IMG/VR virus record: IMGVR_UViG_3300047994_000374
Location: 1-64,000 of that record
Length of the DNA stretch: 64,000 nt
Reading direction: 5' to 3' (one strand)
Shown here piece after piece: positions 2,026-53,714 of the stretch. The notes below the pieces were generated by a model. That model had not been told where the DNA came from, did no database searches, and was given only the letters and a program-made list of their open reading frames with translations. The translations under genes were made by a program, and so were the position numbers. Each line of letters starts with the position of its first letter. Within the stretch, counting starts at the first letter, position 1.

Positions 2026-2149
2026 TTACAAGAAAGCCTGAATTTTTACAAGCGACCGTATCTTATTTTGTAAGTCTTTGGTAAATGGAATCCCTTCGCC
2101 CTGCCATTTCTTCTAAAGCTTTACCACAAAACAAACATGTCTCAAGCAT
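2026..2149 (-). pseudogene. internally deleted, frameshifted tail-family gene
   Basis: Starts MLETCLFCGK (CxxC); a different frame ends ..KIRSLVKIQAFL*; 124 nt, not a multiple of 3. Confidence 0.6.
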
Positions 2150-3070: not shown

Positions 3071-3387
3071 ATGAATATACCAGATTACTGAAAGGTTATG
3101 AGCGTTCGAATACGATTAAGAAGCCTATCTTTTGTGATGGTTTGAAAATCAATTACATTTCCATCTATATAACAATACTTTGGCTTAAATTGTTCTAATA
3201 CTGATCCATCACCATCGCATTTATGAATAGATATAATGTTCTTGATTGGATTAGAGTGAGTTTTAACGATGGTATAAAGTGTTTCACCATCATAAACTCG
3301 ACAATCTTCTTTTTCTAATTTAAATGGAATGTCCCAATGATTGAACCAAATTAAATAATGAGTGAATTACCATTGTATTAATGCAAT

Positions 3388-4551
3388 TTAATGCAATGAC
3401 TTCTGAGGCAAATCAGAATGATTTGCCGCAAGGCTTAAACCAAGCCTTTTAATATTGATTGCTGCGTTTTGATCCCTGCTCATTGCGAAGTCACAAGCTT
3501 CGCAATGATATTCTCGCTCACTCAAAGATAAACTTTCTTTTATCTGTAAACACTTTGAGCATGTCTTTGATGTATTCTTCGGATCAACTGAGGTTACTTT
3601 CTTATCAGCTCTTTCGGCCTTATAAGTTAGCTTTTGAATAAAACTTCCCCAGCTTGCTTCTGTTATACTTTTTACTAAATTTGTATGACCTTCTTTAATC
3701 ATATTTTGAATATTAAGCTTTTCGAAAATGATTTCATCATTTTCTCTTAACAACTTTAATGATAACTTATGTTGAAAGTCTTCTTTAATATTATGAACTT
3801 TTTGATACGCTTTTGCTAATTGACTCTTCGCCTTGAAGCGGTTCTTGGAGCCCTTCTTTTTAAGGGCAAGCTTTTGATTAAGGAAAGCTAGCTTCTCTTT
3901 AGCAGTCTTGTAGGGCTTTGGATGATGGGACTGCGTCCCATCATCCGTGGTAATGAAAGAAGAAATACCTAAGTCAATAGCTACTGTCTTTTGAGTTTTA
4001 GCTAAAGGTTGAAGGGGAACCTCATCACAAGAAAGAATAAGATAAAACTTGTCAGCTTCTTTTTTAATGGTAACTGTTTTGCATCGTCCTTGAACAGGAC
4101 GATGCCACTTCACTTTGAGTTCTCCTGGAAGTCCAAATACTTTTAACTTTTTATTGGCAAGAAGTTTAACGCCTCGTGTTTTCAGATCGGCTTGAGGAAA
4201 AATAATAGAACGAAAACGATCTGCTGATTTATAGCGAGGAAATCCTGCTTTTTTGCCGGATTTCTGCTTAACTCTTCTGAAAAAGCTTTTATAGGATGCG
4301 TCTAACTTTTTAAGAACTTGCTGAAGGCTTTGAGCATAAATAGTATTAACTTGATCTTTAAATTCTTTTCTTATTTCTGGAAGTTCAGCAGACTGTTTGT
4401 TATAAGATAAACTTTTATGACATTTCTTATAATAAGAATTCCGCTCTTGCAGAGCGGAATTATACAGAAAACAACAAAAGTTAAAGTTATTTTGAATAAC
4501 TTTTTGCTGAGCTTTGGTTGGGTAAATTCTGTATTTAAAGGATAGTTTCAT
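3388..4551 (-). CDS. tnpB: TnpB RNA-guided endonuclease
   Basis: N-terminal YRIYPT; RuvC D (AIDLG), E (IFEKL), D (RDQNAAINI); Zn finger CSKC/CEAC. Confidence 0.95.
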   Translation of the reverse strand: MKLSFKYRIYPTKAQQKVIQNNFNFCCFLYNSALQERNSYYKKCHKSLSYNKQSAELPEIRKEFKDQVNTIYAQSLQQVLKKLDASYKSFFRRVKQKSGKKAGFPRYKSADRFRSIIFPQADLKTRGVKLLANKKLKVFGLPGELKVKWHRPVQGRCKTVTIKKEADKFYLILSCDEVPLQPLAKTQKTVAIDLGISSFITTDDGTQSHHPKPYKTAKEKLAFLNQKLALKKKGSKNRFKAKSQLAKAYQKVHNIKEDFQHKLSLKLLRENDEIIFEKLNIQNMIKEGHTNLVKSITEASWGSFIQKLTYKAERADKKVTSVDPKNTSKTCSKCLQIKESLSLSEREYHCEACDFAMSRDQNAAINIKRLGLSLAANHSDLPQKSLH

Positions 4552-5153: not shown

Positions 5154-5459
5154 TTATAAAAATGTTTGTAATTTAACTAATCGTTTAGTTTTGTTTATTA
5201 ATTCTTTATCAGGCTCCCAAAAATCATTTATTTCAAATAATGCCGCTTCTGAATAGTTCCCAGGATTTCTTTGATGTAGTGTACTTACACTCTTTTCTTT
5301 AGATGAACGAAATATAAATCTTTCATTATTAAATATGAATGTATAGGTGTATCCTGCGCTTTTTACCCACTTCGAAAAATGATGATCTTGCTCGTTAACT
5401 GAACATTGCGGACCATTAAAAGGTTTATCACATATAGGGCATTTGTCAAGTTGAATCAT
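5154..5459 (-). CDS. tail-family protein with N-terminal CxxC
   Basis: CPIC..C; ends RLVKLQTFL; ATGA-coupled. Confidence 0.75.
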   Translation of the reverse strand: MIQLDKCPICDKPFNGPQCSVNEQDHHFSKWVKSAGYTYTFIFNNERFIFRSSKEKSVSTLHQRNPGNYSEAALFEINDFWEPDKELINKTKRLVKLQTFL

Positions 5460-5653
5460 GTGAATGCCGGAAGTAGTAATGCTAATTTAAATTTATTACA
5501 AATTGGAACAAAACAACTTTTACAAATTCGATTTCTACCAGGATACATATTAATTACAGCGAAGACATCATGTGTATTTAATAATTCATCACACTCATCA
5601 CATGTCCAAGCTCCGCTCCATCTTTCAACTTTAATTACTTTAATATCTATCAT
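5456..5653 (-). CDS. tail-family C4 zinc-finger protein
   Basis: CDEC/CKSC; ends LLLPAFT. Confidence 0.75.
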   Translation of the reverse strand: MIDIKVIKVERWSGAWTCDECDELLNTHDVFAVINMYPGRNRICKSCFVPICNKFKLALLLPAFT

Positions 5654-5880
5654 GCAAATGCCTTCAATTTAGGATCCATTGCCATTCTAAATTTATCACA
5701 AATGGGACCAAAACATTTTTCGCACAAGTAAATTACTCCACCAAAAGATTTATTGAAATAAATCCTGGCATAATTTTTGTGCTGATATAAACGACTATCA
5801 CATTCGGCGCATTTCCAATCGTATGACATCATAACTACGTTTTGAGAGTCGCGGCATGGTATAATTGTAATTTCGATCAT
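5650..5880 (-). CDS. tail-family C4 zinc-finger protein
   Basis: CAEC/CEKC; ends DPKLKAFA. Confidence 0.75.
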   Translation of the reverse strand: MIEITIIPCRDSQNVVMMSYDWKCAECDSRLYQHKNYARIYFNKSFGGVIYLCEKCFGPICDKFRMAMDPKLKAFA

Positions 5881-6092
5881 GTGAAAGCTCTAATATTGGG
5901 ATCAAGTTTTATTCTGACCTCTTTAACAAAGAGCGGAATACAAGCATTGCATAAATTAAAAGCATAATCTGCAAACTGACAATAAGCATATTGAGATCCT
6001 TCTGCTATTTCAGAACTACACATACGACAATAAGATACGAGATGCCATTCTGTACTAGTTTCTGTTAAATTAACAATTTCAAATTGAATCAT
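5877..6092 (-). CDS. tail-family C4 zinc-finger protein
   Basis: CRMC/CNAC; ends DPNIRAFT. Confidence 0.75.
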   Translation of the reverse strand: MIQFEIVNLTETSTEWHLVSYCRMCSSEIAEGSQYAYCQFADYAFNLCNACIPLFVKEVRIKLDPNIRAFT

Positions 6093-6313
6093 GTAAATGC
6101 TCTTAATTTTGGATCCATCGCCACTCTAATATCTTTAAAAACACTGTCAATACACCCTCCACAAATATAAAATGTTTCGTCTCTATCGTAAGTTGCATCT
6201 CGAAAATGAAACCTTACGCACGTTGTTCCTACTTTAATGCGTTCTGTAAGTTTTTCGCAGCCTTCATTGGCACAAAAAATATATGAAATAGCTTCTACAA
6301 GTTCAATTTTCAT
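6089..6313 (-). CDS. tail-family C4 zinc-finger protein
   Basis: CANEGC/CGGC; ends DPKLRAFT. Confidence 0.75.
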   Translation of the reverse strand: MKIELVEAISYIFCANEGCEKLTERIKVGTTCVRFHFRDATYDRDETFYICGGCIDSVFKDIRVAMDPKLRAFT

Positions 6314-6513
6314 GTGAAGGCTTTTAATTTCGGATCAAATAGAAGCCGGACTTTCTCTACGAATGGTCCAAAGCAACCTTCACAAATAAGCATCCTACCA
6401 GCATAATAAGAATCAATTTCTCCGGCAACTTTATAGATGTTTAATTGACCATCACAAAAATCACATGAATAATAATCTTCTTCAGATGTTTCTCGAATAT
6501 TAAGATCAATCAT
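6310..6513 (-). CDS. tail-family C4 zinc-finger protein
   Basis: CDFC/CEGC; ends DPKLKAFT. Confidence 0.75.
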   Translation of the reverse strand: MIDLNIRETSEEDYYSCDFCDGQLNIYKVAGEIDSYYAGRMLICEGCFGPFVEKVRLLFDPKLKAFT

Positions 6514-6713
6514 GTAAATGCTGTAATTGCTTCGTCTAAGTTTAAACGAACTTCAGTTACAAAAGGTTTAAAACAATCAGCGCAAAGTTTCAAATTGCCG
6601 GCTTGACAAGAAATAATTGCCATTTTTTGACCTTTATTTAATGGTTTTTCGCACCAAAGACATTCACTATAGTGTTTGCCTGAACCTATTATAACTTTAA
6701 TGTAGCAGCTCAT
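6510..6713 (-). CDS. tail-family C4 zinc-finger protein
   Basis: CLWC/CADC; ends DEAITAFT. Confidence 0.75.
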   Translation of the reverse strand: MSCYIKVIIGSGKHYSECLWCEKPLNKGQKMAIISCQAGNLKLCADCFKPFVTEVRLNLDEAITAFT

Positions 6714-7120
6714 TTTAAAAACACATTAGGAAAGTGTAGTTTAAAAGTAGCAAGAGCTGCTCGATTATAAGACCCAAATGCAGCAGTTTCATCGGAAGTC
6801 AATTGTTTCGCAGTAATCCAAGCGACTTCCATATCCTCACACTTAGATGGTTCGCCTTCCCAATCTGTAGCATAAAAACAATAGGACATAAAGTCAATCC
6901 CATCAGGAGAATGTTTTGGTTCGAATTGATGAAAAATCTCTACGCAATCCTTTACAACCACTCCGGTTTCTTCTTTAGTTTCTCGAATGGCAGCTTCTTT
7001 AATTGTTTCTCCATCGTCTTGTTTTCCGCCGATTAATCCCCATTTGGTTTTATCAGATCTTCGCGTAATCCCAAGAATAAGACCATCTTTTATAATTAAC
7101 ATCACGGCTGCGTTTTTCAT
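6710..7120 (-). CDS. NUDIX hydrolase
   Basis: Nudix box GGKQDDGETIKEAAIRETKEETG. Confidence 0.92.
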   Translation of the reverse strand: MKNAAVMLIIKDGLILGITRRSDKTKWGLIGGKQDDGETIKEAAIRETKEETGVVVKDCVEIFHQFEPKHSPDGIDFMSYCFYATDWEGEPSKCEDMEVAWITAKQLTSDETAAFGSYNRAALATFKLHFPNVFLK

Positions 7121-7269
7121 AGGAATGCTTTCAATTTGATGAATTTAAGATCATTGGATAATTTTAAAAGTAGCCCAATCGGAAAGTAGTTTAGGACGAT
7201 GTGTGCAATTAGAATCGTTAGCGTTGCATGGATTTCCTTTTCCTTCTGGGAATTTCTGACAAACTTCAT
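7117..7269 (-). other. overprinted 50-aa ORF or orphan tail ending KFIKLKAFL
   Basis: Alternative frame of 7151-7381; its TGA overlaps the NUDIX ATG (ATGA). Confidence 0.45.
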
Positions 7270-7381
7270 AAAGATAACAGGTGTCACAAATATAATCGTT
7301 ATATTCGGTAAGAGCGTGTTCTAAATTCTCTTCTCCGTTTTTACAGCCATCACATTTACAATAATTACAAAATGGAATCAT
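7151..7381 (-). CDS. Cys-rich hypothetical protein
   Basis: Multiple CxxC; ATGA-coupled to the upstream gene. Confidence 0.7.
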   Translation of the reverse strand: MIPFCNYCKCDGCKNGEENLEHALTEYNDYICDTCYLYEVCQKFPEGKGNPCNANDSNCTHRPKLLSDWATFKIIQ

Positions 7382-7734
7382 CCGAAAACCATGATTTTTT
7401 TCATTCGTGCCATTACTTCATGATAAAGCTTTATAGGATCGGTAAAATTAAATTCAGTTTCCCAATGCAAGCTCAAAATATCTTCAAGCCAATCTTCATC
7501 ATTCCGCTGAATCCATTTTACAGTATTACTCGGTGTATTAAACTCAATCCAATTTTTGCCATCAATATTAAGTTGCATCCGTGACCACTCGGTGATTCGT
7601 ATATAATAGCACTCGTAATTAAGCTCATCCAAGCAGGCTGGGCAATAATATTCAGTTGGAAAATTATTTGAATTGACTAACTTGCCCTTACAAATTATAC
7701 ATGGTAATTTTGTCAGATCCTCAATAGAAATCAT
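7378..7734 (-). CDS. tail-family protein with N-terminal C4 ribbon
   Basis: CIIC/CPAC; ends RMKKIMVFG. Confidence 0.72.
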   Translation of the reverse strand: MISIEDLTKLPCIICKGKLVNSNNFPTEYYCPACLDELNYECYYIRITEWSRMQLNIDGKNWIEFNTPSNTVKWIQRNDEDWLEDILSLHWETEFNFTDPIKLYHEVMARMKKIMVFG

Positions 7735-8003
7735 GTGAAAGCTTTAATTTTTTCAGACTTTGCGTACACTCCTTTGTAAAGATCTCTAATCTCAGATTCA
7801 ATTTTACAGGGATAGGTCGAGAAGTTATCAGACCAATTGTATTCAAAATGTTTTAAATGGCGATAAGATTTTCTATTTTTAAAAGTGGAGTGTGTGCTTT
7901 GAATATACACCTCTAAAATCACTTCATTTGTGTTGTCATCCAAATGAAATTCAAGTTTGTATTGAATAGTTCTGTCTTCCAATGTTTTCGATAATAGAAT
8001 CAT
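7731..8003 (-). CDS. tail-family protein
   Basis: Ends SEKIKAFT. Confidence 0.7.
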   Translation of the reverse strand: MILLSKTLEDRTIQYKLEFHLDDNTNEVILEVYIQSTHSTFKNRKSYRHLKHFEYNWSDNFSTYPCKIESEIRDLYKGVYAKSEKIKAFT

Positions 8004-8053
8004 TTCAGGCTTTCAATCCAAAATATAAAGCTAAAATTTAAATATGCAAGGGT

Positions 8054-8218
8054 TTAATCGCGCAAAACGGAACATTTGCCATTACAACCGGCACAATCAA
8101 GTTCCATTTTGCCATCTCTAACCTTTTCTAAATCTTCAGGCTCTTCAAGTTCAAGATCATAAATGGTATTGCAATCATTACATCGGAACAGGAAATGGGA
8201 AATCAGTTCGGAAAACAT
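8054..8218 (-). CDS. small zinc-ribbon protein (54 aa, not in track)
   Basis: MFSELISHFLFRCNDC...CAGC...VLRD*. Confidence 0.6.
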   Translation of the reverse strand: MFSELISHFLFRCNDCNTIYDLELEEPEDLEKVRDGKMELDCAGCNGKCSVLRD

Positions 8219-8247
8219 AACTATATATCAAATGAGCGGTAGATTGA

Positions 8248-9201
8248 TTATTCTACTTTGAGGCAATGAGGAGAAAACCATATAACTTCACGACCTTTAT
8301 TTTCTAATCCGGGACTTTCTGTTTTTGATTGATTTGCCATACCGCCGACTGTTTCCCAATTATAAATCGTCCAACCTTCAGGAAACACATAATCATTATC
8401 ATATCCACAAAGGGCAATTCTTAATTTTGGATTATCACCATTCTCAATCGCCCACTTCATAACATCAGAAAATATATCTTCATCTTCTTGATAGAGCTTT
8501 TTTACTCTTCCCTGATGCTCATATGGGGGGTCAAGACAAATTCCAGTGATATCTTTTGAGACTAATCCTTTATTCTTGTAAGTAATGGCAGGCGAAACTA
8601 AATCTTTCCAATCTCTACAACAAATTCTAACTCTCTTTAATCGTTTTTGTAATGTTTCAAACCAAGAAATTGGTGTATGTTTAAGCCCTTGTATGCCTGA
8701 CCCCGCTGAAGATAACATTGGCATGGCCTTTAGCCCTCTTGTTTGGAGCCAGTTACCAGGGATCGATGCACATTGACCGTATATCCACCATCCGCCAAGT
8801 TTTAAATCATAAAAATTAGGGTCATTATTCATTTTGGTTTTAAATTCTGTGGTAAATTGTTCTAAAATCCATTTATGACGAGCGTGTAAATCGACTTCGG
8901 ACACCGGATAGTCACAATATTTTGCCAAACCTTCAGGATCATTCGAAACACATCGCCAAAAATTAACCAAAGCACAATCAATATCATTTACAGTTTCAAT
9001 TTTGGCTGGATGTGGGTTCGCTAAAAGAACCGCCAATGAACCACCAAAAGGCTCTACATAATTGGTTACTTGCCCCAAACCATTAAAAATAATAGATCCG
9101 ACCTTCCGCTTACCACCCCAATATGAGAATGGGGGTAGTAATTTACTATCTTTAGTTGTCATATTTAAGTATATAACCAAGCCAAATGATCTATTTACCA
9201 A
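8248..9201 (-). CDS. Dam-like (D12 class) N6-adenine DNA methyltransferase
   Basis: YWGGK, YVEPFGGS, VNDID, LDPPY; true start probably MTTKDSK. Confidence 0.88.
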   Translation of the reverse strand: MVNRSFGLVIYLNMTTKDSKLLPPFSYWGGKRKVGSIIFNGLGQVTNYVEPFGGSLAVLLANPHPAKIETVNDIDCALVNFWRCVSNDPEGLAKYCDYPVSEVDLHARHKWILEQFTTEFKTKMNNDPNFYDLKLGGWWIYGQCASIPGNWLQTRGLKAMPMLSSAGSGIQGLKHTPISWFETLQKRLKRVRICCRDWKDLVSPAITYKNKGLVSKDITGICLDPPYEHQGRVKKLYQEDEDIFSDVMKWAIENGDNPKLRIALCGYDNDYVFPEGWTIYNWETVGGMANQSKTESPGLENKGREVIWFSPHCLKVE

Positions 9202-10961
9202 GTCTAATCCAAAAAATTAATACATTCGTTCGTTCTGCTATTTTCTCGCATAATTTGATCTCTAAAGGTCAAGGCTATACGATGCCTGATGATCCTGAAG
9301 AGGATGCCCCAGATACCGAACGAGGTGAAGATTTGGGACTTTACAGTAAAATTCTTCAAGCGGGCAATCAAATCGCCGATGAAAACATTCGTACAGAAGT
9401 CCTTTTAATTGCTGATCTCTATAAAAAAGCACTTGAAGTTAATGGCGGATACAATTTCGTCAATAAAGCTATTTCAAACTCGATTAATTTACTTGATGAC
9501 GAAGATGACGACGAACAATCAGCCGTCGAAGATTTGCTCAATGAAGTTTCCAAAGATTTAAGAAACCGTTCGAAGTTAGCAGGCACCGCAACCACTGGCG
9601 ATTCAGCTGCCTCATTAAAAGCGCTACAAGACGCCAAGCGAGACTTTAATAACAAAGAGCTGGCAGAAGAACTTCAAGAGCAACGTGGACCTAACTTACA
9701 TGATGAGAATATCGAGGCTCCACCATTACCTGATGAAAAAATAAAAGACGACCTAACTAAATATGATGAAAAGGCAAAAGGCGTTTTCGATATGTCAGGT
9801 GGAGTCAATCAGGAAGTTGGACAATCAAAGGGCCGTGGGTATCGAACAGATCATAAATCGTTTAAAGATTGGACCGCGAGTTATGAAAACGAGCGACAAC
9901 GCTATTTAGATGAAGCTCGTCAAATCGAAGCAAAATCAGCACAAACGAATGGGCTCCTTGGCAAACATGATAAGCAAGCCCTAGAAAGAATTAAAGAACT
10001 CGTCACCGTATTAGAACGAATGAGAGATTTCACTTTCGTCGCAACTCAACTCGAAAAGAAATTTGCAGAAGCTCCGAGCACAGAAATCACCACTCAATTA
10101 GATGAAATTCGTGATAAAATTAGTGAAATGTCAAAGAAGCGCAATGAACTTAAGGCTAACATTCGTTCTTATGAGCTTCGAAATCAATTAAAGTTTATGG
10201 AAGAAGATTTAGCCACGGTGAAAGACCCACGCGCCAAGTTCCTGCTTCAACAGAAAAAAGAACTTCATGAACTAATGTTGGGTCAAGGAAAGAATAAATC
10301 GGAAGAGTCCAAGCTCCGACGCCAATTAATTGATGCGATGAGTGGCGGAAATGCTCTTACCGGATTAACTTTTTCAACCATGATTCAAAAAATTGAGGAC
10401 GCAAAGAATAGGCGCAAACAAGAAAACGCTGAATTCAAAGAGAAGAACACGACTACTATTCATAATAAACGAGATCAAGAAGGGCGTATTGAGGGCAAAT
10501 TAGATGGACTTGCAATTGCGCTTCAACAGACCATTGCCTCTATTAAAAATGATCTTCGCAAAAAGATCATAAAGAAGCTTTCATCTGATCCAAATGTCCT
10601 TGCCCAATTCGCCCCCTATCTTCAAAAAATCGAAGCTGTTAAAGGAACGCCAGCCGAAAAACAAGCAGATAAAGATTTGAAGTCTGCCCAATCCGCTTAT
10701 GCTGTTGAAGATCCGGACATTAAAAACTTCGTTGCTGAAAGTGCAAGATTATACAAATTCCGAGACACCATTAATCAATTACACATGGTGGGTATGTTGT
10801 ATGAGGAAAATGAATTAGCTCCCGCAGAAAAAGTGGAAATCACAAAGTTATATGATGAGGGTCGTGAGCTATTAGCATATTACGCAACTCGTCCAAAACC
10901 TTTTACTCAATTGCAAAAACCTTTATTTGCCATTGTCGAGCGATTAAAAAAGAAAATATAA
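9186..10961 (+). CDS. large helical/coiled-coil hypothetical protein
   Basis: 591-aa ORF rich in E/K/L/A; true start probably MPDDPEE; opposite strand to the arrays. Confidence 0.75.
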   Translation: MIYLPSLIQKINTFVRSAIFSHNLISKGQGYTMPDDPEEDAPDTERGEDLGLYSKILQAGNQIADENIRTEVLLIADLYKKALEVNGGYNFVNKAISNSINLLDDEDDDEQSAVEDLLNEVSKDLRNRSKLAGTATTGDSAASLKALQDAKRDFNNKELAEELQEQRGPNLHDENIEAPPLPDEKIKDDLTKYDEKAKGVFDMSGGVNQEVGQSKGRGYRTDHKSFKDWTASYENERQRYLDEARQIEAKSAQTNGLLGKHDKQALERIKELVTVLERMRDFTFVATQLEKKFAEAPSTEITTQLDEIRDKISEMSKKRNELKANIRSYELRNQLKFMEEDLATVKDPRAKFLLQQKKELHELMLGQGKNKSEESKLRRQLIDAMSGGNALTGLTFSTMIQKIEDAKNRRKQENAEFKEKNTTTIHNKRDQEGRIEGKLDGLAIALQQTIASIKNDLRKKIIKKLSSDPNVLAQFAPYLQKIEAVKGTPAEKQADKDLKSAQSAYAVEDPDIKNFVAESARLYKFRDTINQLHMVGMLYEENELAPAEKVEITKLYDEGRELLAYYATRPKPFTQLQKPLFAIVERLKKKI

Positions 10962-14265: not shown

Positions 14266-15536
14266 GTGAATCACTCTGCCCTTAAGGGCGGAGCTTCTGA
14301 AACAACTTTTAAAGTTGTCGCAAGGCTTATACCAAACCGTTTAATATTTATAGCTGCATTTTGATCTCGATTGATTGTCAATCCACAAGATTGACAATCA
14401 TATATCCTATCCTTTAAAGATAAGTCTTTCTTGATCATTTTGCAACTGGAACACATCTTGGATGTGTTCCTTGGATCAACCTCTATAACAGAAACACCAG
14501 CTCTTTCAGCCTTGTATTTCATGAGGGAAACAAAGTTTCCCCAAGAAGCATCTGTAATGTTACTCTTTGATACCTTGAAGCCTTTGGCTTCCAGCATGGT
14601 CGAAATGTTTAACTTCTCTACATATACGGTATCGTTCTCCTTAACGAATTGATTGGCAATTTTATGTTGCCAATCATTTCGAATATCTGAAACTTTTTGA
14701 TGAGCTTTCTGCAACATGGAAAGTACTCTTCTTCTATTCTTGGAACCTTTCTGCTTTGCAGAAAGCTTCTTATTAAGAAATGCTAACTTTTCTTTGGCAG
14801 TTTTATAAGGTTTAGGATGATGGAATGATATTCCATCATCGGTTGTTATAAAGCTATTTATTCCAAGGTCAATGCCGGTTGTCTTTCCTGTTTTACTTTG
14901 CGCTAGCATAGGCACCTCATCGCAAAATGCGATGAGATAATACTTATCGCCTTCTCTTTTAATCGATACCGTCTTGCATCGTCCTTTAATCGGACGATGC
15001 AGAACAATGGAAACTTCACCAGGCAGTCCATAAACTTTAAGCTTCTTATTTGGAAGAAGTTTAACTCCTCCAGTAACTAAATCACATTGAGGAAACTTTA
15101 TGCTTTTGAACTTTGAGATTGGCTTATATCTGGGGAAACCCGGCGTTAAGCCTGACTGCTTTACTCTACGGAAAAAACCTTGAAATGCAACATCCAAAGT
15201 CTTCAATATGAATTGAAGACTTTGAGAATAGATTGAGTTCGTTTCTTCTTCAAAAAGCGCTTTGATATCAGGAAGTTGTTTTGCCTGATCGTTATAAGAA
15301 ACACCCTTATTATACTTTTTATAATGAGAAATTCTTTCTTGAAGAGCCGCATTATAAAGACCATTACAGAACGAGAATGTTTTAAACAACGCTTCGCGTT
15401 GTTTAACATTAGGGTATATTCGGTATTTATAGGAAAGTTTCATTTGTTATGGTTCAATATATCAGGGTTAAATATAATTTTTATTTAGTTGCCCATTCAA
15501 CCCCGCCTAAAGGCGGAGGTTTTCTGCTATCGAAGG
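14266..15536 (-). mobile_element. non-autonomous IS200/IS605-family element 2 (tnpB only), 1271 bp
   Basis: Inserted 3' of TTAT with no duplication; left-end hairpin 15501-15519; right-end hairpin 14274-14293 ending TTCAC. Confidence 0.9.
14271..15443 (-). CDS. tnpB: TnpB RNA-guided endonuclease
   Basis: RuvC D (GIDLG), E (YVEKL), D (RDQNAAINI); Zn finger; C-terminus SEAPPLRAE overlaps the right-end hairpin. Confidence 0.95.
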   Translation of the reverse strand: MKLSYKYRIYPNVKQREALFKTFSFCNGLYNAALQERISHYKKYNKGVSYNDQAKQLPDIKALFEEETNSIYSQSLQFILKTLDVAFQGFFRRVKQSGLTPGFPRYKPISKFKSIKFPQCDLVTGGVKLLPNKKLKVYGLPGEVSIVLHRPIKGRCKTVSIKREGDKYYLIAFCDEVPMLAQSKTGKTTGIDLGINSFITTDDGISFHHPKPYKTAKEKLAFLNKKLSAKQKGSKNRRRVLSMLQKAHQKVSDIRNDWQHKIANQFVKENDTVYVEKLNISTMLEAKGFKVSKSNITDASWGNFVSLMKYKAERAGVSVIEVDPRNTSKMCSSCKMIKKDLSLKDRIYDCQSCGLTINRDQNAAINIKRFGISLATTLKVVSEAPPLRAE

Positions 15537-23279: not shown

Positions 23280-23291
23280 GGCAAATGGGAA

Positions 23292-35874: not shown

Positions 35875-37529
35875 TTAACCGATACTAAAACCACAAATAT
35901 TTTTAAATCGTTTTGGACATTTAATTTTCTTTGCCGTTATCATTTCCTTCTCTGTAGTCCTCTTCTTGCAAACGAATAAATACCAATTAGCTTTTAAATC
36001 ATAAGGATACAGTCCCCAATGAAGTTTTTCAATAACCGCCCACTTATAAAAGCCCGCCTCTTCAATATCGCCATAATTACCCATGACGGCAGCTTGGGCT
36101 TGTTTTAAAGTAGGATACCAGCCCACCGCTCTAAAATCAGATCGTTCTCCGTGTTCATTTGTATATACCCGCCCCGTAGATAGAACATAGATGGGTTTTG
36201 CTTTAGACCTCTTCATTTGGATTCTCATCAGGCAAAATATTTAATGAAATGGGAAACAGAATAAAGTTTGTTCCTACATTATCCCACTGACATTGCATAC
36301 TAAATAACTTTTTTGTTTCATTTAAATCATCACAAAGAACAGCAGGTCCATCATATTCATTGTTAGAAATGTAATGCAAGATTTTTAAACTTGAATGATG
36401 AGCTTCCTTTTCGAACTGAATTTGCTCCGGCTTGTGGTATAATTTTTGATTATAAATCATTCAAAACCTACCAACTTACTGTTTTACAAGTTGCTTTTAA
36501 GATAACAGTTTGAGCCTTTGCATCGCCCAAAATAATCTTCTCTTCATCTTCATCTGCGCCATTTATATCACAGAACGCCATTACAGCAATCCATCCAGCA
36601 CTTTTATTATGACAGTAGAATCCCGCAACCGACTGATTGAATTTCGTTGCCGTTAAACTTTGTCGTTCGCAAGTCCATGGAAAATTATCAAATGTATAAA
36701 ATAATCCGCTTAAACTTGGATCATCATCTGTCATAACTCTACCATCCGAATAGTCAGTTTCAAATGCCCAAGTCGTTCGGCTATGTAGTGTTTGTGCATC
36801 TGCCGAAACTGCAAAGCACATCAACATAAGACCAAACATCCATTTAAACATATTAGTTTCCACTTCCGACCAAGCTCTTCTCTACAAACGAATCAAGAGA
36901 CCAACCACAAGCCTCAATAAAGTTCTCAATCAAGAGGCACTGCTCTTCAATTGCTTTTGGATCTTCTTTTAGATCTTGCGAATAAAGCTTCTCAACTTCC
37001 AACGACACTTGCTCAAAAGTAATCATTTCAATTTTCCTGTTTCTACAAAGGTTTCCCAATAGGTTTTTAATTTATCCCAACTATCAACGCCCAGTGAATG
37101 ACCATCCGATTTACAGTCAATCATGAGTGTGCAAAAGATTTCAAACTCATTGGACTTCTGAATAGCTGAGCGCATCATAAAGTCAAGTTGAGTGTCTGAA
37201 AGTAAATGTTCAGCGCCAGGAGTCAATCCCCAAGCTTCAAAAAATTGTTTAACGAGTTCGAATTGCATTTAGTTATTAATTTCCCAATATATATTCCAGT
37301 CAAAAGCCAAAACTAATTTCAAAACATCATGGATATCTTTACGAACAACCCGACAACTATTGGGTAGTAAAACAATCCATCCACTCTCAAATGCAGGCTT
37401 ACATACAGTCATGCCTCGTTCTTCTGCCATCTCTTTAACGGATAAAGTCAATTGATGCAGAGTAGTTTTCTTATCCTCAAACATATCTTTTGTCTTTCGA
37501 ATGTGCAAATGGGAATTACCAAAATACAC
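35875..37529 (-). other. six hypothetical ORFs including secreted 36468-36863
   Basis: ORF track; signal peptide ..LMCFAVSADA. Confidence 0.55.
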
Positions 37530-37959
37530 GAAGTCTTAGTAATCTTTCAAATTCTTGCTGTGATTTGCATTCAATTTGCTCATCATTCAAATACCAACCG
37601 GCAACATCACCATTTAAATATTCGCAAGCTGGACCACATTCTCTATGTAGCTTGCCATTTAAATAATACTCTTTGTAATTAATATCTTTTGATCCGGCGA
37701 TTTTAAACATTTTAACGGTATAGATTATATTTTTCTCTATAATCTGTTCTGAATGATGAAATCCATCCCAATCATCCAGCCAATCATACTCTTCATAAAG
37801 ATCCATATCATGATAAGTTTCTTGGGCTAAAATCTCATCTGTTGCTTCTTTTTTCCAAGAAAAACGATCGATGATAGTATGTTTTTTATGCGTTCCGGAT
37901 TTAAACCGACCGCTGTTAAACATATCTTTGGCTACATGATTTCTTGGTAATTTTGACAT
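37516..37959 (-). CDS. tail-family protein with an LHRxxGPA repeat
   Basis: NGKLHRECGPACEY...WYLND; ends FERLLRLRVFW. Confidence 0.75.
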   Translation of the reverse strand: MSKLPRNHVAKDMFNSGRFKSGTHKKHTIIDRFSWKKEATDEILAQETYHDMDLYEEYDWLDDWDGFHHSEQIIEKNIIYTVKMFKIAGSKDINYKEYYLNGKLHRECGPACEYLNGDVAGWYLNDEQIECKSQQEFERLLRLRVFW

Positions 37960-40430: not shown

Positions 40431-40919
40431 TTACCAGAATGCTTTCAATTTTAAAAATTTTTCGAATTCTTCTTGTGAATTAACTGGAATTCTTTCACCT
40501 TGATACCACCACTCTTTTCTACCATAATCATAAATTACAGCGGGTCCAAGCTCTCGATGTTTATATTTTGTATCGTAAATATAATCGGTCCCAGTAAGTA
40601 AGTAAAAGATTGTAATACGACCGACCTGCCAATAACTAACGCAGTATACTAAACCATTTTCGATGATGGTTCTATTGGGTTTATATTTATCAGTATCGCT
40701 CCAATAACTATTCATGATTAAAAAAAATGCTTTCAGTTTCATCCATCGCTCAAATTCTTCTTGAGATTTAACTTCAATACGTTGCCCCATATATACCCAA
40801 GTCAATTCACCATTTGGAAGAATTACAGCTGGACCATCTTCCCTATGAATGATATTTTCACTTGAACCTTGAGTGATATAATAAACTATATCACCATTTG
40901 GATATGTATGGGATGGCAT
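40431..40919 (-). CDS. two LHRxxGPA tail-family units fused at a T8 run
   Basis: IHREDGPA...KLKAFF joined to MNSYW...HRELGPA...KLKAFW; 8-nt run at 40720-40727. Confidence 0.75.
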   Translation of the reverse strand: MPSHTYPNGDIVYYITQGSSENIIHREDGPAVILPNGELTWVYMGQRIEVKSQEEFERWMKLKAFFLIMNSYWSDTDKYKPNRTIIENGLVYCVSYWQVGRITIFYLLTGTDYIYDTKYKHRELGPAVIYDYGRKEWWYQGERIPVNSQEEFEKFLKLKAFW

Positions 40920-42476: not shown

Positions 42477-42511
42477 GATTATGTTGATATGGATTTTTGT
42501 GAAATGGGAAA

Positions 42512-43078: not shown

Positions 43079-43122
43079 AAAATATACTACTTCGATGTCG
43101 TTTGATTATTTGGAAATGGGAA

Positions 43123-52212: not shown

Positions 52213-52401
52213 TCAAGTGAAAGCTTTAATCTTTTTGCATCTCTCGCTACAAAATCCGCTTCGTTGGCACATCTCTTCAAGTCTATTAAAAGATATCCCG
52301 ACGCCGTTAATGTAAGCATCATAGATAATTTTTTCATTACAAGCAAGACATCTTTCACCATACCACGCTCTAATATCTTTGACATCGGTATAATTTCTCA
52401 T
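52213..52401 (-). CDS. tail-family mini zinc finger (CxxC...CSxxC)
   Basis: CLAC/FCSERC; ends KKIKAFT. Confidence 0.75.
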   Translation of the reverse strand: MRNYTDVKDIRAWYGERCLACNEKIIYDAYINGVGISFNRLEEMCQRSGFCSERCKKIKAFT

Positions 52402-52550
52402 TCAAATGCACTCAATTCATCACATCTTTTACTACAATACTTAAAGCAATTACTTATACCAATTTCAGTAGCATAAGGGTCATATAATTTCTTACAAATA
52501 AGACATTCTGTTTCTACGCCAATATATGTGAAGTCATCGTCGTCATACAT
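52398..52550 (-). CDS. tail-family mini zinc finger (50 aa, not in track)
   Basis: MYDDDDF..CLIC...YCSKRCDELSAFE*; ATGA-coupled. Confidence 0.72.
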   Translation of the reverse strand: MYDDDDFTYIGVETECLICKKLYDPYATEIGISNCFKYCSKRCDELSAFE

Positions 52551-52553
52551 TGT

Positions 52554-52694
52554 TTATTCCCATCCGGAAAGTTCTTTGCAACGATTTGAGCAATACTTTT
52601 TACTCGTGTCTATTTTCCAATGCGGCGACTTAATACTAAAATGCTTCTTACAAATTGGACACACGCATCTGATTACATATTCAAAGATACTCAT
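52554..52694 (-). CDS. tail-family mini zinc finger (46 aa, not in track)
   Basis: MSIFEY..CPIC...YCSNRCKELSGWE*. Confidence 0.72.
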   Translation of the reverse strand: MSIFEYVIRCVCPICKKHFSIKSPHWKIDTSKKYCSNRCKELSGWE

Positions 52695-52885
52695 TGCCAA
52701 CACCTTAATTTACTACATCTTTCAGAACAATGCCACTCTTCATCGAAATTAAATTCATTGGTTTTCGATCGTAATTCAAACACTCCCTTGCATACTGGAC
52801 ACTCAACATTAACCATATAAATATAATGTTGGTTATAGTATCCGGAGTTCGTTAATATTTTATTGACCCATCCCACAGCTTTCAT
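52691..52885 (-). CDS. tail-family mini zinc finger
   Basis: CPVC/HCSERC; ends KLRCWQ. Confidence 0.72.
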   Translation of the reverse strand: MKAVGWVNKILTNSGYYNQHYIYMVNVECPVCKGVFELRSKTNEFNFDEEWHCSERCSKLRCWQ

Positions 52886-53064
52886 TCGAATCCCGAAAGT
52901 CTTTTACATCTTACTGAACAATAATCTTTCTTCCTCTTTATTTCATGGAGGTTAAACGCATCGTAAGTCATATCTACTTCAAATAAATTTTTACATATAT
53001 CACAGCTCATTGTAATAATATACGTAGGACCGTTAAGTTTGACGGATTTGTTTGACCACCACAT
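52882..53064 (-). CDS. tail-family mini zinc finger
   Basis: CDIC/YCSVRC; ends RLSGFE. Confidence 0.72.
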   Translation of the reverse strand: MWWSNKSVKLNGPTYIITMSCDICKNLFEVDMTYDAFNLHEIKRKKDYCSVRCKRLSGFE

Positions 53065-53232
53065 TCATCCCCACGCTCTCAAATCATAACACTTGAAACT
53101 ACAATACCCAACCGGAGGTAAAGCTTTCTTTACTTCATCGTATTTAAATCCGCCAAGCATACGAAGGTCCGTCTTACAAACCAAACAATTTGTTACTGGG
53201 GCTGCCGTATAGTATGTGATTGTAAAAAGCAC
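53065..53232 (-). CDS. tail-family mini zinc finger (55 aa, GTG start, not in track)
   Basis: CLVC...YCSFKCYDLRAWG*; overlaps the 3' end of the protease gene. Confidence 0.6.
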   Translation of the reverse strand: MLFTITYYTAAPVTNCLVCKTDLRMLGGFKYDEVKKALPPVGYCSFKCYDLRAWG

Positions 53233-53714
53233 CAACTCGGATGTTCATTGCAGAGTAAATCAATATCTTCTTTTGTAATATAATTTGACATCTTATCCAC
53301 ATAAGGATTCATGATACTAAAACGATTCATATGATCTAATCCTAATGCGTGCCCAGTCTCATGGATGACAACCTTTAAGAACCAATCCTCCGGCATATCA
53401 TTTAATTTTATCCAAGCGACATTGTTAGGACTATACCAAGTTGTCCAACCAAGTTCATCATCAAATGGGAAACCAGGAAATATATAGATGGTATTGTATC
53501 GTGGTGGTGAATGATTGCTTGCTCCTTGAACTCTAAATTGAAATTCAGGAGGATGCGTGATGATTAATTTTTTCCATTTTAGTACGCCTTCTTCAATTTG
53601 ATTTACTTGATGCGGTGTAAAATCAGAAGAGATATAGACGGTATATTTGGCAGGGATAGTTTCCGCGCACCCTGTCAATAAAATTAAAAATAGAAACAAA
53701 TAAACTAAACGCAT
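53193..53714 (-). CDS. matrixin-like metalloprotease lipoprotein
   Basis: Lipobox LLTGC; HETGHALGLDH; Met-turn SIMNP. Confidence 0.87.
   Translation of the reverse strand: MRLVYLFLFLILLTGCAETIPAKYTVYISSDFTPHQVNQIEEGVLKWKKLIITHPPEFQFRVQGASNHSPPRYNTIYIFPGFPFDDELGWTTWYSPNNVAWIKLNDMPEDWFLKVVIHETGHALGLDHMNRFSIMNPYVDKMSNYITKEDIDLLCNEHPSWCFLQSHTIRQPQ

What the first reader, a model, noticed from the sequence alone, without database searches (positions are those of the whole stretch)
7117..7269. Orphan tail KFIKLKAFL left in front of the NUDIX gene
The 30 bp between 7151-7381 and the NUDIX gene encode ...SNDLKFIKLKAFL*, a perfect tail whose TGA overlaps the NUDIX ATG. It lies in another frame from the upstream Cys-rich gene and is open back to an ATG at 7269 (50 aa). 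Inference: either a new gene replaced the body and the tail was kept, or an overprinted or frameshifted product still uses it.
Basis: partly seen in the sequence, partly recalled or inferred. Interest (0 to 1): 0.6.

Follow-up and report, generated by a model that had tools for sequence, protein, structure and literature searches.

The report
Leftover gene end before NUDIX gene
The 30 bases in front of a jumbo phage's NUDIX gene are the leftover last ten codons of a lost member of the phage's large family of small genes that share one C-terminal tail; the piece is most likely no longer translated and now serves only as the leader of the NUDIX gene, so it is an ordinary gene remnant.

Summary
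On the minus strand, the 30 nt between the Cys-rich gene (7151-7381) and the NUDIX gene (6710-7120) read LKFIKLKAFL* in the +1 frame. The TGA overlaps the NUDIX ATG. About 100 of roughly 617 genes in this 394-kb phage end in the same tail. On a tail profile the orphan scores 20 bits, rank 20 of about 21,800 stop-terminated positions.

The Cys-rich gene is a complete member of a widespread, uncharacterised phage family. None of the 28 aligned homologues has the tail. Nine further family loci in viral contigs show no tail-like peptide nearby.

The 50/56-aa overlapping ORF is not coding. Against a 96% identical relative it shows 1 synonymous and 14 non-synonymous changes upstream of the spacer. 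Synonymous changes in the Cys-rich frame are not suppressed.

No indel separates the frames in four lineages. No frameshift stimulator is present.

Similar relics recur in this genome and in related huge phages. One is an 18-aa head-plus-tail minigene.

Best reading: a vestigial 3' end of a deleted or replaced tail gene. The spacer is conserved about as well as other intergenic spacers, so it probably persists as the NUDIX leader. A low-level +1 frameshift product is not excluded.

The parts
7117..7149 (-). Orphan tail: ten codons LKFIKLKAFL plus TGA, in the +1 frame relative to the Cys-rich gene. The TGA (7119-7117) overlaps the NUDIX ATG.
   Evidence: Profile score 20.0 bits, rank 20 of about 21,800. 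The best DNA matches in the genome are other tail ends (98478-98500 at 22/23; 372834-372865 at 28/32), and they start exactly at the K(-9) codon.
7121..7150 (-). 30-nt spacer between the Cys-rich stop and the NUDIX start. Inferred to be the present NUDIX leader.
   Evidence: 3 of 30 positions differ from L003, against a synonymous-site divergence of 0.33 (binomial p 0.004). That matches other spacers (5/50). It is less folded than shuffles (z +1.4). No promoter or terminator was found, and no SD-like motif.
7151..7381 (-). Cys-rich gene (76 aa), a complete member of a widespread uncharacterised phage family. Its native end is ...HRPKLLSDWATFKIIQ.
   Evidence: 72 representatives at E<1e-3. Alignment A2 has ten invariant columns (eight Cys, plus A23 and P63), and proteins end 0-15 aa after the conserved W. 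No Pfam, PHROG or PDB match. Against L003: 13 synonymous and 5 non-synonymous codon changes.
7131..7154 (-). Mini-ORF MILNSSN*. Its ATG overlaps the Cys-rich TGA (ATGA at 7154-7151). Candidate head remnant of the lost gene.
   Evidence: Read from the sequence and kept in L003. Support is weak: 11% of genes with a downstream spacer of 10 nt or more have ATGA at their stop anyway. The analogue is the 18-aa head-plus-tail minigene in L026.
7162..7168 (-). TTT AAA A, the only place where a +1 shift could join the Cys-rich frame to the tail frame.
   Evidence: Frame 0 shows synonymous changes down to 7171. TTTAAAA is kept in L003. The next 0-frame codon is ATT, and the 0-frame stop lies 3 codons further on.
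7150..7287 (-). Upstream part of the tail-frame ORF (56 aa from GTG 7287, 50 aa from ATG 7269). A spurious open frame inside the Cys-rich gene.
   Evidence: 1 synonymous and 14 non-synonymous changes against L003. The Cys-rich pS of 0.33 equals the locus mean of 0.33. No gene was called in this frame on L003.
6710..7120 (-). NUDIX hydrolase gene (136 aa) whose ATG overlaps the orphan tail's stop.
   Evidence: Pfam PF00293, E 1.4e-18. 68 homologues at E<=1e-5, with the same N-terminus in the relatives examined.
7378..7734 (-). Upstream 118-aa gene with its own in-frame tail (ARMKKIMVFG, 15.6 bits). Its TGA overlaps the Cys-rich ATG.

Best explanation
The orphan tail is the vestigial 3' end (last ten codons and stop) of a lost member of this phage's family of small genes that share a C-terminal tail. 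That gene once lay between the Cys-rich gene and the NUDIX gene, joined to both by ATGA stop/start overlaps as in the neighbouring arrays. Its body was removed by a deletion, or by replacement with the Cys-rich gene. The removed length was not a multiple of three, so both junctions survived but no start codon was left in the tail frame. The remnant is no longer translated as a tail. It persists as the 30-nt unstructured leader and former coupling junction of the NUDIX gene. Shown: the tail is real, it is foreign to the Cys-rich gene, it has no selected reading frame behind it, and the arrangement is stable in four lineages. Inferred: the deletion history, and the reason the remnant is retained.
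For: 1. The tail matches the family profile at 20.0 bits, and the plus-strand control shows this is not chance.
2. The tail is selected at protein level in real genes. Third codon positions are free, and F is TTC/TTT at 50:46. A tail with no coding frame behind it is therefore a remnant rather than a DNA signal.
3. The Cys-rich gene is a full-length member of a tail-less family. Nine IMG/VR loci of that family have no tail-like peptide within 1.5 kb.
4. DNA similarity to other tails begins at the K(-9) codon, just after the Cys-rich stop.
5. The same kinds of relic recur. In this genome there are 2026 (28 codons, no start) and 3085 (93 codons, no start, next to TnpB). There are also frameshifted tails at 96163 (7-nt repeat x3), 97845 (C7 run) and 379151 (A8 run). 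Related huge phages have an 18-aa head-plus-tail minigene between two ATGA junctions, and two frameshifted tails.
6. 57% of tail genes overlap the next gene by ATGA, against 12% of other genes. A relative has an intact tail gene directly upstream of its NUDIX gene (L004).
7. Against L003 the orphan shows 1 synonymous and 2 non-synonymous changes, and its profile score falls from 20.0 to 15.2. Eight real tails show 12 synonymous and 3 non-synonymous.
8. The spacer is conserved like other intergenic spacers (3/30 against pS 0.33, p 0.004) and is unstructured.
Against: No relative with the intact ancestral gene at this position was found, so the deletion is inferred and not observed. The window's copy of the tail is still a perfect consensus, and the spacer is more conserved than synonymous sites. 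That would also fit a tail that is still translated. The difference in substitution pattern between the orphan and real tails is not significant (Fisher p 0.09). The ATGA at the Cys-rich stop is only weak support for a head remnant (11% background). The role as NUDIX leader is untested, and only 40-50% of genes here have an SD-like motif, so its absence says little.
Confidence: 0.65

Rival explanations
1. The Cys-rich gene itself once carried the tail in frame in an ancestor of this lineage, after an earlier fusion. A 1-nt indel in the T4A4 run (7162-7169) then cut the tail off. The orphan would be the gene's own lost end.
For: The tail frame reads as a plausible complete module (LSNDLKFIKLKAFL, with an S-x-D cap) starting right after the T4A4 run. 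Only three 0-frame codons (IIQ) follow the run. Other tails in this genome are cut off by indels in homopolymer runs or short repeats.
Against: All 28 aligned homologues lack the tail and end 0-15 aa after the conserved W, as the window protein does. Nine IMG/VR family loci have no tail nearby. This history needs two events (fusion, then frameshift) where one out-of-frame deletion suffices. DNA similarity to other tails does not extend upstream of the K(-9) codon.
Confidence: 0.12
2. A fraction of ribosomes shifts +1 on UUU AAA A (Lys-tRNA re-pairs on the A4 run). This makes a tail-bearing isoform of the Cys-rich protein. It terminates at the ATGA and couples NUDIX translation.
For: The geometry is right: the tail frame is +1 and AAA_A allows re-pairing. 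TTTAAAA and the frames are kept in L003, and no indel occurs in X5 or X7. The tail is a perfect consensus, and the spacer is more conserved than synonymous sites.
Against: The A-site codon is a common AUU, and the 0-frame stop is three codons away, unlike known +1 sites (established knowledge: prfB CUU_UGA). There is no upstream SD-like stimulator. The downstream RNA is less structured than shuffles (z +1.4). L003 changes the hydrophobic -8 position from F to S and loses 4.8 bits, and orphan changes are 2 non-synonymous to 1 synonymous against 3:12 in real tails. Other spacers are equally conserved.
Confidence: 0.07
3. An overprinted gene of 50-56 aa (ATG 7269 or GTG 7287 to TGA 7117) is translated inside the Cys-rich gene and carries the tail.
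For: The frame is open for 67 codons and has start codons.
Against: In that frame upstream of the spacer, changes against L003 are 1 synonymous and 14 non-synonymous. The synonymous rate of the Cys-rich frame is not lowered: pS is 0.33 against a locus mean of 0.33, and 11 of the 13 synonymous changes lie in the overlapped part. No gene was called there on L003.
Confidence: 0.01
4. The tail-like reading is a chance resemblance, or a DNA- or RNA-level signal rather than former coding sequence.
For: The DNA pattern recurs at gene junctions (15 matches against 1 expected).
Against: Third codon positions across 100 tails carry almost no information, so the motif is a peptide and not a nucleic-acid signal. 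A 20-bit match is reached by 1 of 12,122 control positions on the plus strand.
Confidence: 0.01

Closest known systems
Vestigial gene fragments (pseudogene remnants) in the plastic, small-gene regions of large phages
   Same: A short 3' piece of a former gene is left between two intact genes, with no start codon and no selected frame. It sits in a region of fast gene gain, loss and duplication. This genome has several more such pieces.
   Different: The remnant can be recognised only because the family's last ten residues are so conserved. It keeps the exact stop/start overlap with the downstream gene, and it is as conserved as functional spacers.
Translationally coupled gene junctions (ATGA stop/start overlap; reinitiation after termination, established in bacteria and phages)
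   Same: The orphan's TGA overlaps the NUDIX ATG, as at 57% of tail-gene junctions. The Cys-rich stop also sits in ATGA.
   Different: No ribosome in the 0 frame now reaches the ATGA, because termination is 30 nt upstream. Any coupling would need reinitiation over a distance, or a relay through the 7-codon mini-ORF. This is inferred and not tested.
Programmed +1 ribosomal frameshift sites (prfB type)
   Same: A P-site codon can re-pair in the +1 frame (AAA_A), and a 0-frame stop lies nearby.
   Different: There is no slow or stop codon in the A site, no SD-like stimulator, no structure, and no selective signature in the shifted frame.
Overprinted (overlapping) phage genes such as lambda Rz/Rz1
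   Same: A second open frame lies inside a known gene.
   Different: The second frame evolves without constraint, and the host frame's synonymous rate is normal.

Membership tests
This phage's tail-bearing small-gene family (C-terminal [RK]-h-x-K-[LI]-x-A-F-x*) | The last ten residues match the family profile | tested here: met
   20.0 bits, rank 20 genome-wide. All of positions -9 to -1 carry residues common at that position in the family.
This phage's tail-bearing small-gene family (C-terminal [RK]-h-x-K-[LI]-x-A-F-x*) | The tail is in frame with a body ORF that has a start codon and evolves under purifying selection | tested here: not met
   The tail frame upstream of the spacer shows 1 synonymous and 14 non-synonymous changes. 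The selected frame (13:5) is the Cys-rich one, which stops 30 nt earlier.
This phage's tail-bearing small-gene family (C-terminal [RK]-h-x-K-[LI]-x-A-F-x*) | The stop codon overlaps the start of the next gene (ATGA), as in 57% of members | tested here: met
   TGA 7119-7117 overlaps ATG 7120-7118.
Cys-rich small-protein family (FCxxCxC..C...HA.T...ICxxC..Y..C...PC...C.HRPKL.S.W) | The invariant Cys pattern and the HRPKL..W end are present over the full length | tested here: met
   Ten invariant columns in 29 sequences (eight Cys, A23, P63). H61 and R62 are nearly invariant. The window protein is aligned end to end.
Cys-rich small-protein family (FCxxCxC..C...HA.T...ICxxC..Y..C...PC...C.HRPKL.S.W) | Members carry the phage's tail motif | tested here: not met
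   None of the 28 homologues does. No peptide of 10 bits or more lies within 1.5 kb in 9 IMG/VR loci.
Programmed +1 ribosomal frameshift site | The P-site tRNA can re-pair in the +1 frame | tested here: met
   AAA followed by A at 7165-7162.
Programmed +1 ribosomal frameshift site | A slow or stop codon in the A site, plus a stimulator (upstream SD-like element or downstream structure) | tested here: not met
   The A-site codon is ATT and the stop is 3 codons downstream. The fold z-score is +1.4. No SD-like motif was found.
Programmed +1 ribosomal frameshift site | The shifted-frame product is made | not testable with these tools
   No RNA or proteome data are available. All holder runs are on record as DNA or are unclassified, and all are kept as contigs.
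Overprinted gene | Reduced synonymous rate in the host frame, and constraint in the second frame | tested here: not met
   pS is 0.33 in the Cys-rich gene against 0.33 for the locus. The second frame is 1:14.

The most novel reading that the evidence does not exclude
The orphan is a caught-in-the-act intermediate of 'tail capture'. Junction-preserving deletions in tightly coupled arrays bring the family's conserved C-terminal module next to unrelated genes. A single-base change, or a low level of +1 slippage on UUU AAA A, would then attach the module to a foreign protein. This would explain how about 88 bodies with no detectable sequence similarity (Zn-ribbon proteins, YacG-like fingers, MORN-variant-like units) came to share one ten-residue tail.
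Probability: 0.12. Interest if true: 0.6.

Novelty: new member of a known kind. Interest (0 to 1): 0.3.

Why it matters
On its own the orphan tail is a small evolutionary scar, and it changes the annotation only slightly. There is no 50-aa gene here. The Cys-rich gene ends at 7151. The NUDIX gene has a 30-nt leader derived from a dead gene.

Its value is as a marker of how this phage's largest gene family turns over. Members are duplicated, frameshifted, fused and deleted. The stop/start junctions with neighbouring genes tend to survive. The conserved tail makes such events visible.

The family itself is the more interesting object and deserves its own study. About one gene in six carries the ten-residue C-terminal motif. 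The bodies are hypervariable. There is no Pfam or PHROG match. The family is present in several huge soil and moss phages.

Tried and rejected
- Nucleotide search of the phage collection with 6000-9500 found no match.
- Peptide-pattern scans of viral contigs found nothing useful. The Cys-rich protein gave none, and the NUDIX protein gave one irrelevant locus.
- The word search found one 93% homologue of the Cys-rich protein. The costly representative search was therefore used, because the protein was left open.
- There are no significant paralogues of the Cys-rich protein in the genome.
- Pfam and PHROGs on about 30 tail-bearing proteins gave nothing above threshold. The ESM Atlas gave no hit.
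- The AlphaFold model of a 110-aa tail protein reached only pLDDT 64.5. It was used only for the statement that the tail is predicted helical, and no fold search was run on it.
- Read laying listed only 40 of 126 substitutions, so the changes of X5 and X7 inside 7117-7150 could not be read.
- SD-motif analysis turned out uninformative, because only 40-50% of genes have such a motif against a 20% random expectation.
- Two literature searches found nothing on such a phage family.

Full report
**Setting**

The window is the first 64 kb of a 394,192-bp IMG/VR virus record, estimated 92% complete. Runs that hold it are moss metagenomes. Nearly all genes lie on the minus strand.

**The observation**

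- On the minus strand a 76-aa Cys-rich ORF (7151-7381) ends ...SDWATFKIIQ, with TGA at 7153-7151.
- Thirty bases further on, the NUDIX gene starts at ATG 7120-7118 (Pfam NUDIX, E 1.4e-18).
- In the +1 frame the end of the Cys-rich gene and the spacer read ...LSNDLKFIKLKAFL. The TGA at 7119-7117 overlaps the NUDIX ATG.
- That frame is open for 67 codons, with GTG at 7287 and ATG at 7269.

**Is it more than chance?**

- Listing ORF ends shows that dozens of minus-strand genes end in one motif.
- In a crude gene set of about 617 minus-strand ORFs, 100 end in it. The consensus is -9 R/K (80%), -8 hydrophobic, -6 K, -5 L/I (87%), -3 A (51%), -2 F (93%), -1 mostly L.
- I built a profile from the last ten residues and scored every stop-terminated position in six frames. 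The orphan gets 20.0 bits, rank 20 of about 21,800. The mostly non-coding plus strand (12,122 positions) has a single position at 12 bits or more.
- The motif is a peptide, not a nucleic-acid signal. Third codon positions carry 0.06-0.3 bits, Ala uses all four codons, and Phe is TTC/TTT at 50:46.
- The last codon ends in A in 71% of cases, only because xxA-TGA creates the next gene's ATG.
- 57% of tail genes overlap the next gene by ATGA, against 12% of other genes.

**Does the tail belong to the Cys-rich gene?**

- The word search found one 93% identical homologue on a 4.4-kb ENA contig with the same gene order (L003).
- Because family scans left the protein open, I ran the exhaustive representative search. 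It found 72 representatives at E<1e-3.
- Twenty-eight of them, aligned with the window protein, define a family with ten invariant columns (eight Cys, plus A23 and P63) and a conserved end, HRPKL-x-S-x-W. A further 0-15 variable residues follow.
- The window protein ends seven residues after that W. W-x-x-F-K recurs in several members, so frame 0 is the native reading to the very end.
- None of the homologues has the tail.
- Nine IMG/VR loci with family members, several on contigs of 200-400 kb, have no tail-like peptide within 1.5 kb.
- The family has no Pfam, PHROG or PDB relative, and no significant paralogue in this genome.
- The tail is therefore foreign to the Cys-rich gene.

**Is the tail frame translated?**

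Against L003 (96% nt identity, no indel):

| Region | Synonymous | Non-synonymous |
|---|---|---|
| Cys-rich frame | 13 | 5 |
| Tail frame upstream of the spacer | 1 | 14 |
| Orphan's ten codons | 1 | 2 |
| Last ten codons of eight real tails | 12 | 3 |

- Synonymous changes in the Cys-rich frame continue down to 7171.
- The synonymous divergence of the Cys-rich gene (0.33) equals the mean of ten genes at the locus (0.33). Eleven of its 13 synonymous changes lie in the overlapped part. An overprinted 50/56-aa gene is rejected.
- In the orphan's ten codons, L003 has L>V at -10, F>S at the hydrophobic -8 position, and a synonymous CTA>TTA. The profile score falls from 20.0 to 15.2.
- The orphan against real tails gives Fisher p 0.09. 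This suggests relaxed peptide-level constraint but does not prove it.

A join to the Cys-rich frame would need a +1 shift, and the only plausible place is TTT AAA A (7168-7162). The following codon is a common ATT. The 0-frame stop is three codons away. There is no SD-like element. The RNA of 7095-7185 folds worse than its shuffles (z +1.4). No promoter- or terminator-like site lies on the coding (minus) strand near the spacer.

**Stability of the arrangement**

Contigs from other runs cover the region without any indel:

- X3 is identical over 7083-7828.
- X5 has 13 differences over 6729-7210.
- X7 (a soil metagenome) has 66 differences over 6813-7416.

The out-of-frame state is therefore at least as old as an 11% nucleotide divergence. 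The table of substitutions was truncated, so the changes of X5 and X7 inside the spacer could not be read.

**Is the spacer drifting freely?**

It is not. Three of 30 positions differ from L003, where synonymous sites differ at 0.33 (binomial p 0.004). Two other intergenic spacers of the same contig are about equally conserved: 5 of 50, and roughly 3-4 differences plus one indel in 29. The constraint is therefore what one sees in leaders generally. It does not point to the tail reading.

**Context that explains the remnant**

With the last 12 residues removed, the 100 tail proteins fall into 88 BLAST singletons or small families. Bodies diverge fast while the tail is kept. The family also decays often. 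In this genome I found:

- a 28-codon tail piece without a start at 2026-2110, downstream of an unrelated gene;
- a 93-codon piece without a start at 3088-3366, abutting a TnpB gene;
- tails thrown out of frame by three copies of a 7-nt unit (96163), by a C7 run (97845) and by an A8 run (379151);
- a 162-aa protein (40431-40919) that is two tail-bearing units fused, with an internal tail followed by L-I-M where a stop and a start used to be.

The same tail arrays occur in other huge IMG/VR phages, among them a 447-kb contig. These contain an 18-aa minigene, MICPFNILQRYINLSAFL, made of a head and a tail between two ATGA junctions. They also contain two frameshifted tails.

A relative whose NUDIX protein is 60% identical has an intact 115-aa tail gene ending 7 nt before its NUDIX start.

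In the window, the Cys-rich stop itself lies in ATGA (7154-7151). The overlapping ATG opens a 7-codon ORF, which could be the head of the lost gene. ATGA occurs at 11% of comparable stops, so this is weak evidence.

DNA similarity of the orphan to other tails starts at the K(-9) codon, a few bases after the Cys-rich stop.

**Conclusion**

The most economical history is as follows. A tail gene lay between the Cys-rich gene and NUDIX, coupled to both by ATGA overlaps. Its body was lost by a deletion, or by replacement with the Cys-rich gene, and the length lost was not a multiple of three. The two junctions and the last ten codons remained.

The remnant is probably untranslated and survives as the NUDIX leader. 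I put this at 0.65.

The rivals are:

| Rival | Confidence |
|---|---|
| Own tail of the Cys-rich gene lost by an indel | 0.12 |
| A low-level +1 frameshift isoform | 0.07 |
| An overprinted gene | 0.01 |
| Chance or a nucleic-acid signal | 0.01 |

The rest is undetermined.

**What the tail does**

The tail's function remains unknown. A low-confidence model (pLDDT 64.5) predicts a C-terminal helix. No known family matched.

**Novelty**

A gene remnant at a coupled junction is a known kind of thing, so interest is low to moderate. The tail family that makes it visible is the more remarkable feature, and I have listed it under things noticed.

Noticed in passing
whole window and the rest of the 394-kb record; also L024-L031: About 100 of roughly 617 minus-strand ORFs (one gene in six) end in the same ten-residue tail, [RK]-h-x-K-[LI]-x-A-F-x*. 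With the tail removed the bodies fall into 88 BLAST singletons or small families. No Pfam or PHROG match was found. The same arrays occur in other huge IMG/VR phages, including a 447-kb contig.
   Followed up: partly
window 2026-2110 (-): A second orphan tail: 28 open codons ending ...RSLVKIQAFL* with no start codon. It lies between an unrelated 110-aa gene (2151-2483) and gene 1474-2001.
   Followed up: partly
window 3088-3366 (-), next to TnpB 3388-4551: A 93-codon open frame ending ...NRIRTLITFQ* without any start codon, abutting a TnpB (OrfB_IS605) gene. It looks like a tail gene beheaded by the insertion. A second TnpB at 14271-15443 shares no DNA similarity with the first.
   Followed up: partly
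G000:C1 96163-96290, 97845-97990, 379151-379260 (outside the window): Three family members have their tails thrown out of frame. The causes are three tandem copies of the 7-nt unit ATGAAAT, a C7 run and an A8 run. These could be real decay, phase-variable sites or homopolymer assembly errors.
   Followed up: no
window 40431-40919 (-): This 162-aa protein is two tail-bearing units fused. An internal tail ...MKLKAFF is followed by L-I-M, where a stop and the next start once were. Each unit has an HRE(D/L)GPA...W..G motif reminiscent of MORN-variant repeats. The 147-aa protein at 37516-37959 shares the motif (weak MORN_2 hit, E 0.024).
   Followed up: no
window 52213-53235 (-): An array of six 49-64-aa genes ending in a Cys knuckle (C-S-x-[RK]-C) followed by the tail. 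Three of the six give sub-threshold hits to the gyrase inhibitor YacG family (E 0.011-0.2). This is a lead only.
   Followed up: partly
window, 22 sites such as 8194-8201, 23284-23291, 37508-37515, 42503-42510, 43115-43122: TTCCCATT occurs 22 times, always on the minus strand (4.4 expected). Many sites lie shortly upstream of gene starts, which fits a phage promoter or other strand-specific signal. A second motif, GATATATAG, precedes gene 8054-8218 and many genes elsewhere in the genome.
   Followed up: partly
L004 3600-3645; L005, L006, L007 about 90 nt upstream of their NUDIX genes: A conserved non-coding stretch (...GTCTTCGGA...GAAACGAGTT...) lies upstream of the NUDIX gene in four distant relatives. 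In L004 a tail gene is inserted between it and NUDIX. It may be a structured RNA or a regulatory site.
   Followed up: no
window 6514-6728: A relative in run X5 lacks array gene 6510-6713 (joint 6513/6729 with 15 other letters). L003 likewise has one array gene fewer. The array varies in copy number between close relatives.
   Followed up: no
window 5154-9201 against L003: Synonymous divergence between the two relatives ranges from 0.09 to 0.50 among neighbouring genes, which suggests mosaic recombination. Array gene 5877-6092 has pN 0.25 (pN/pS about 0.7), so it is evolving very fast.
   Followed up: no
L026 about 7140-7192 (+): An 18-aa minigene MICPFNILQRYINLSAFL sits between two ATGA junctions in a related huge phage. 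It is a family member reduced to its head and tail by an in-frame internal deletion.
   Followed up: partly
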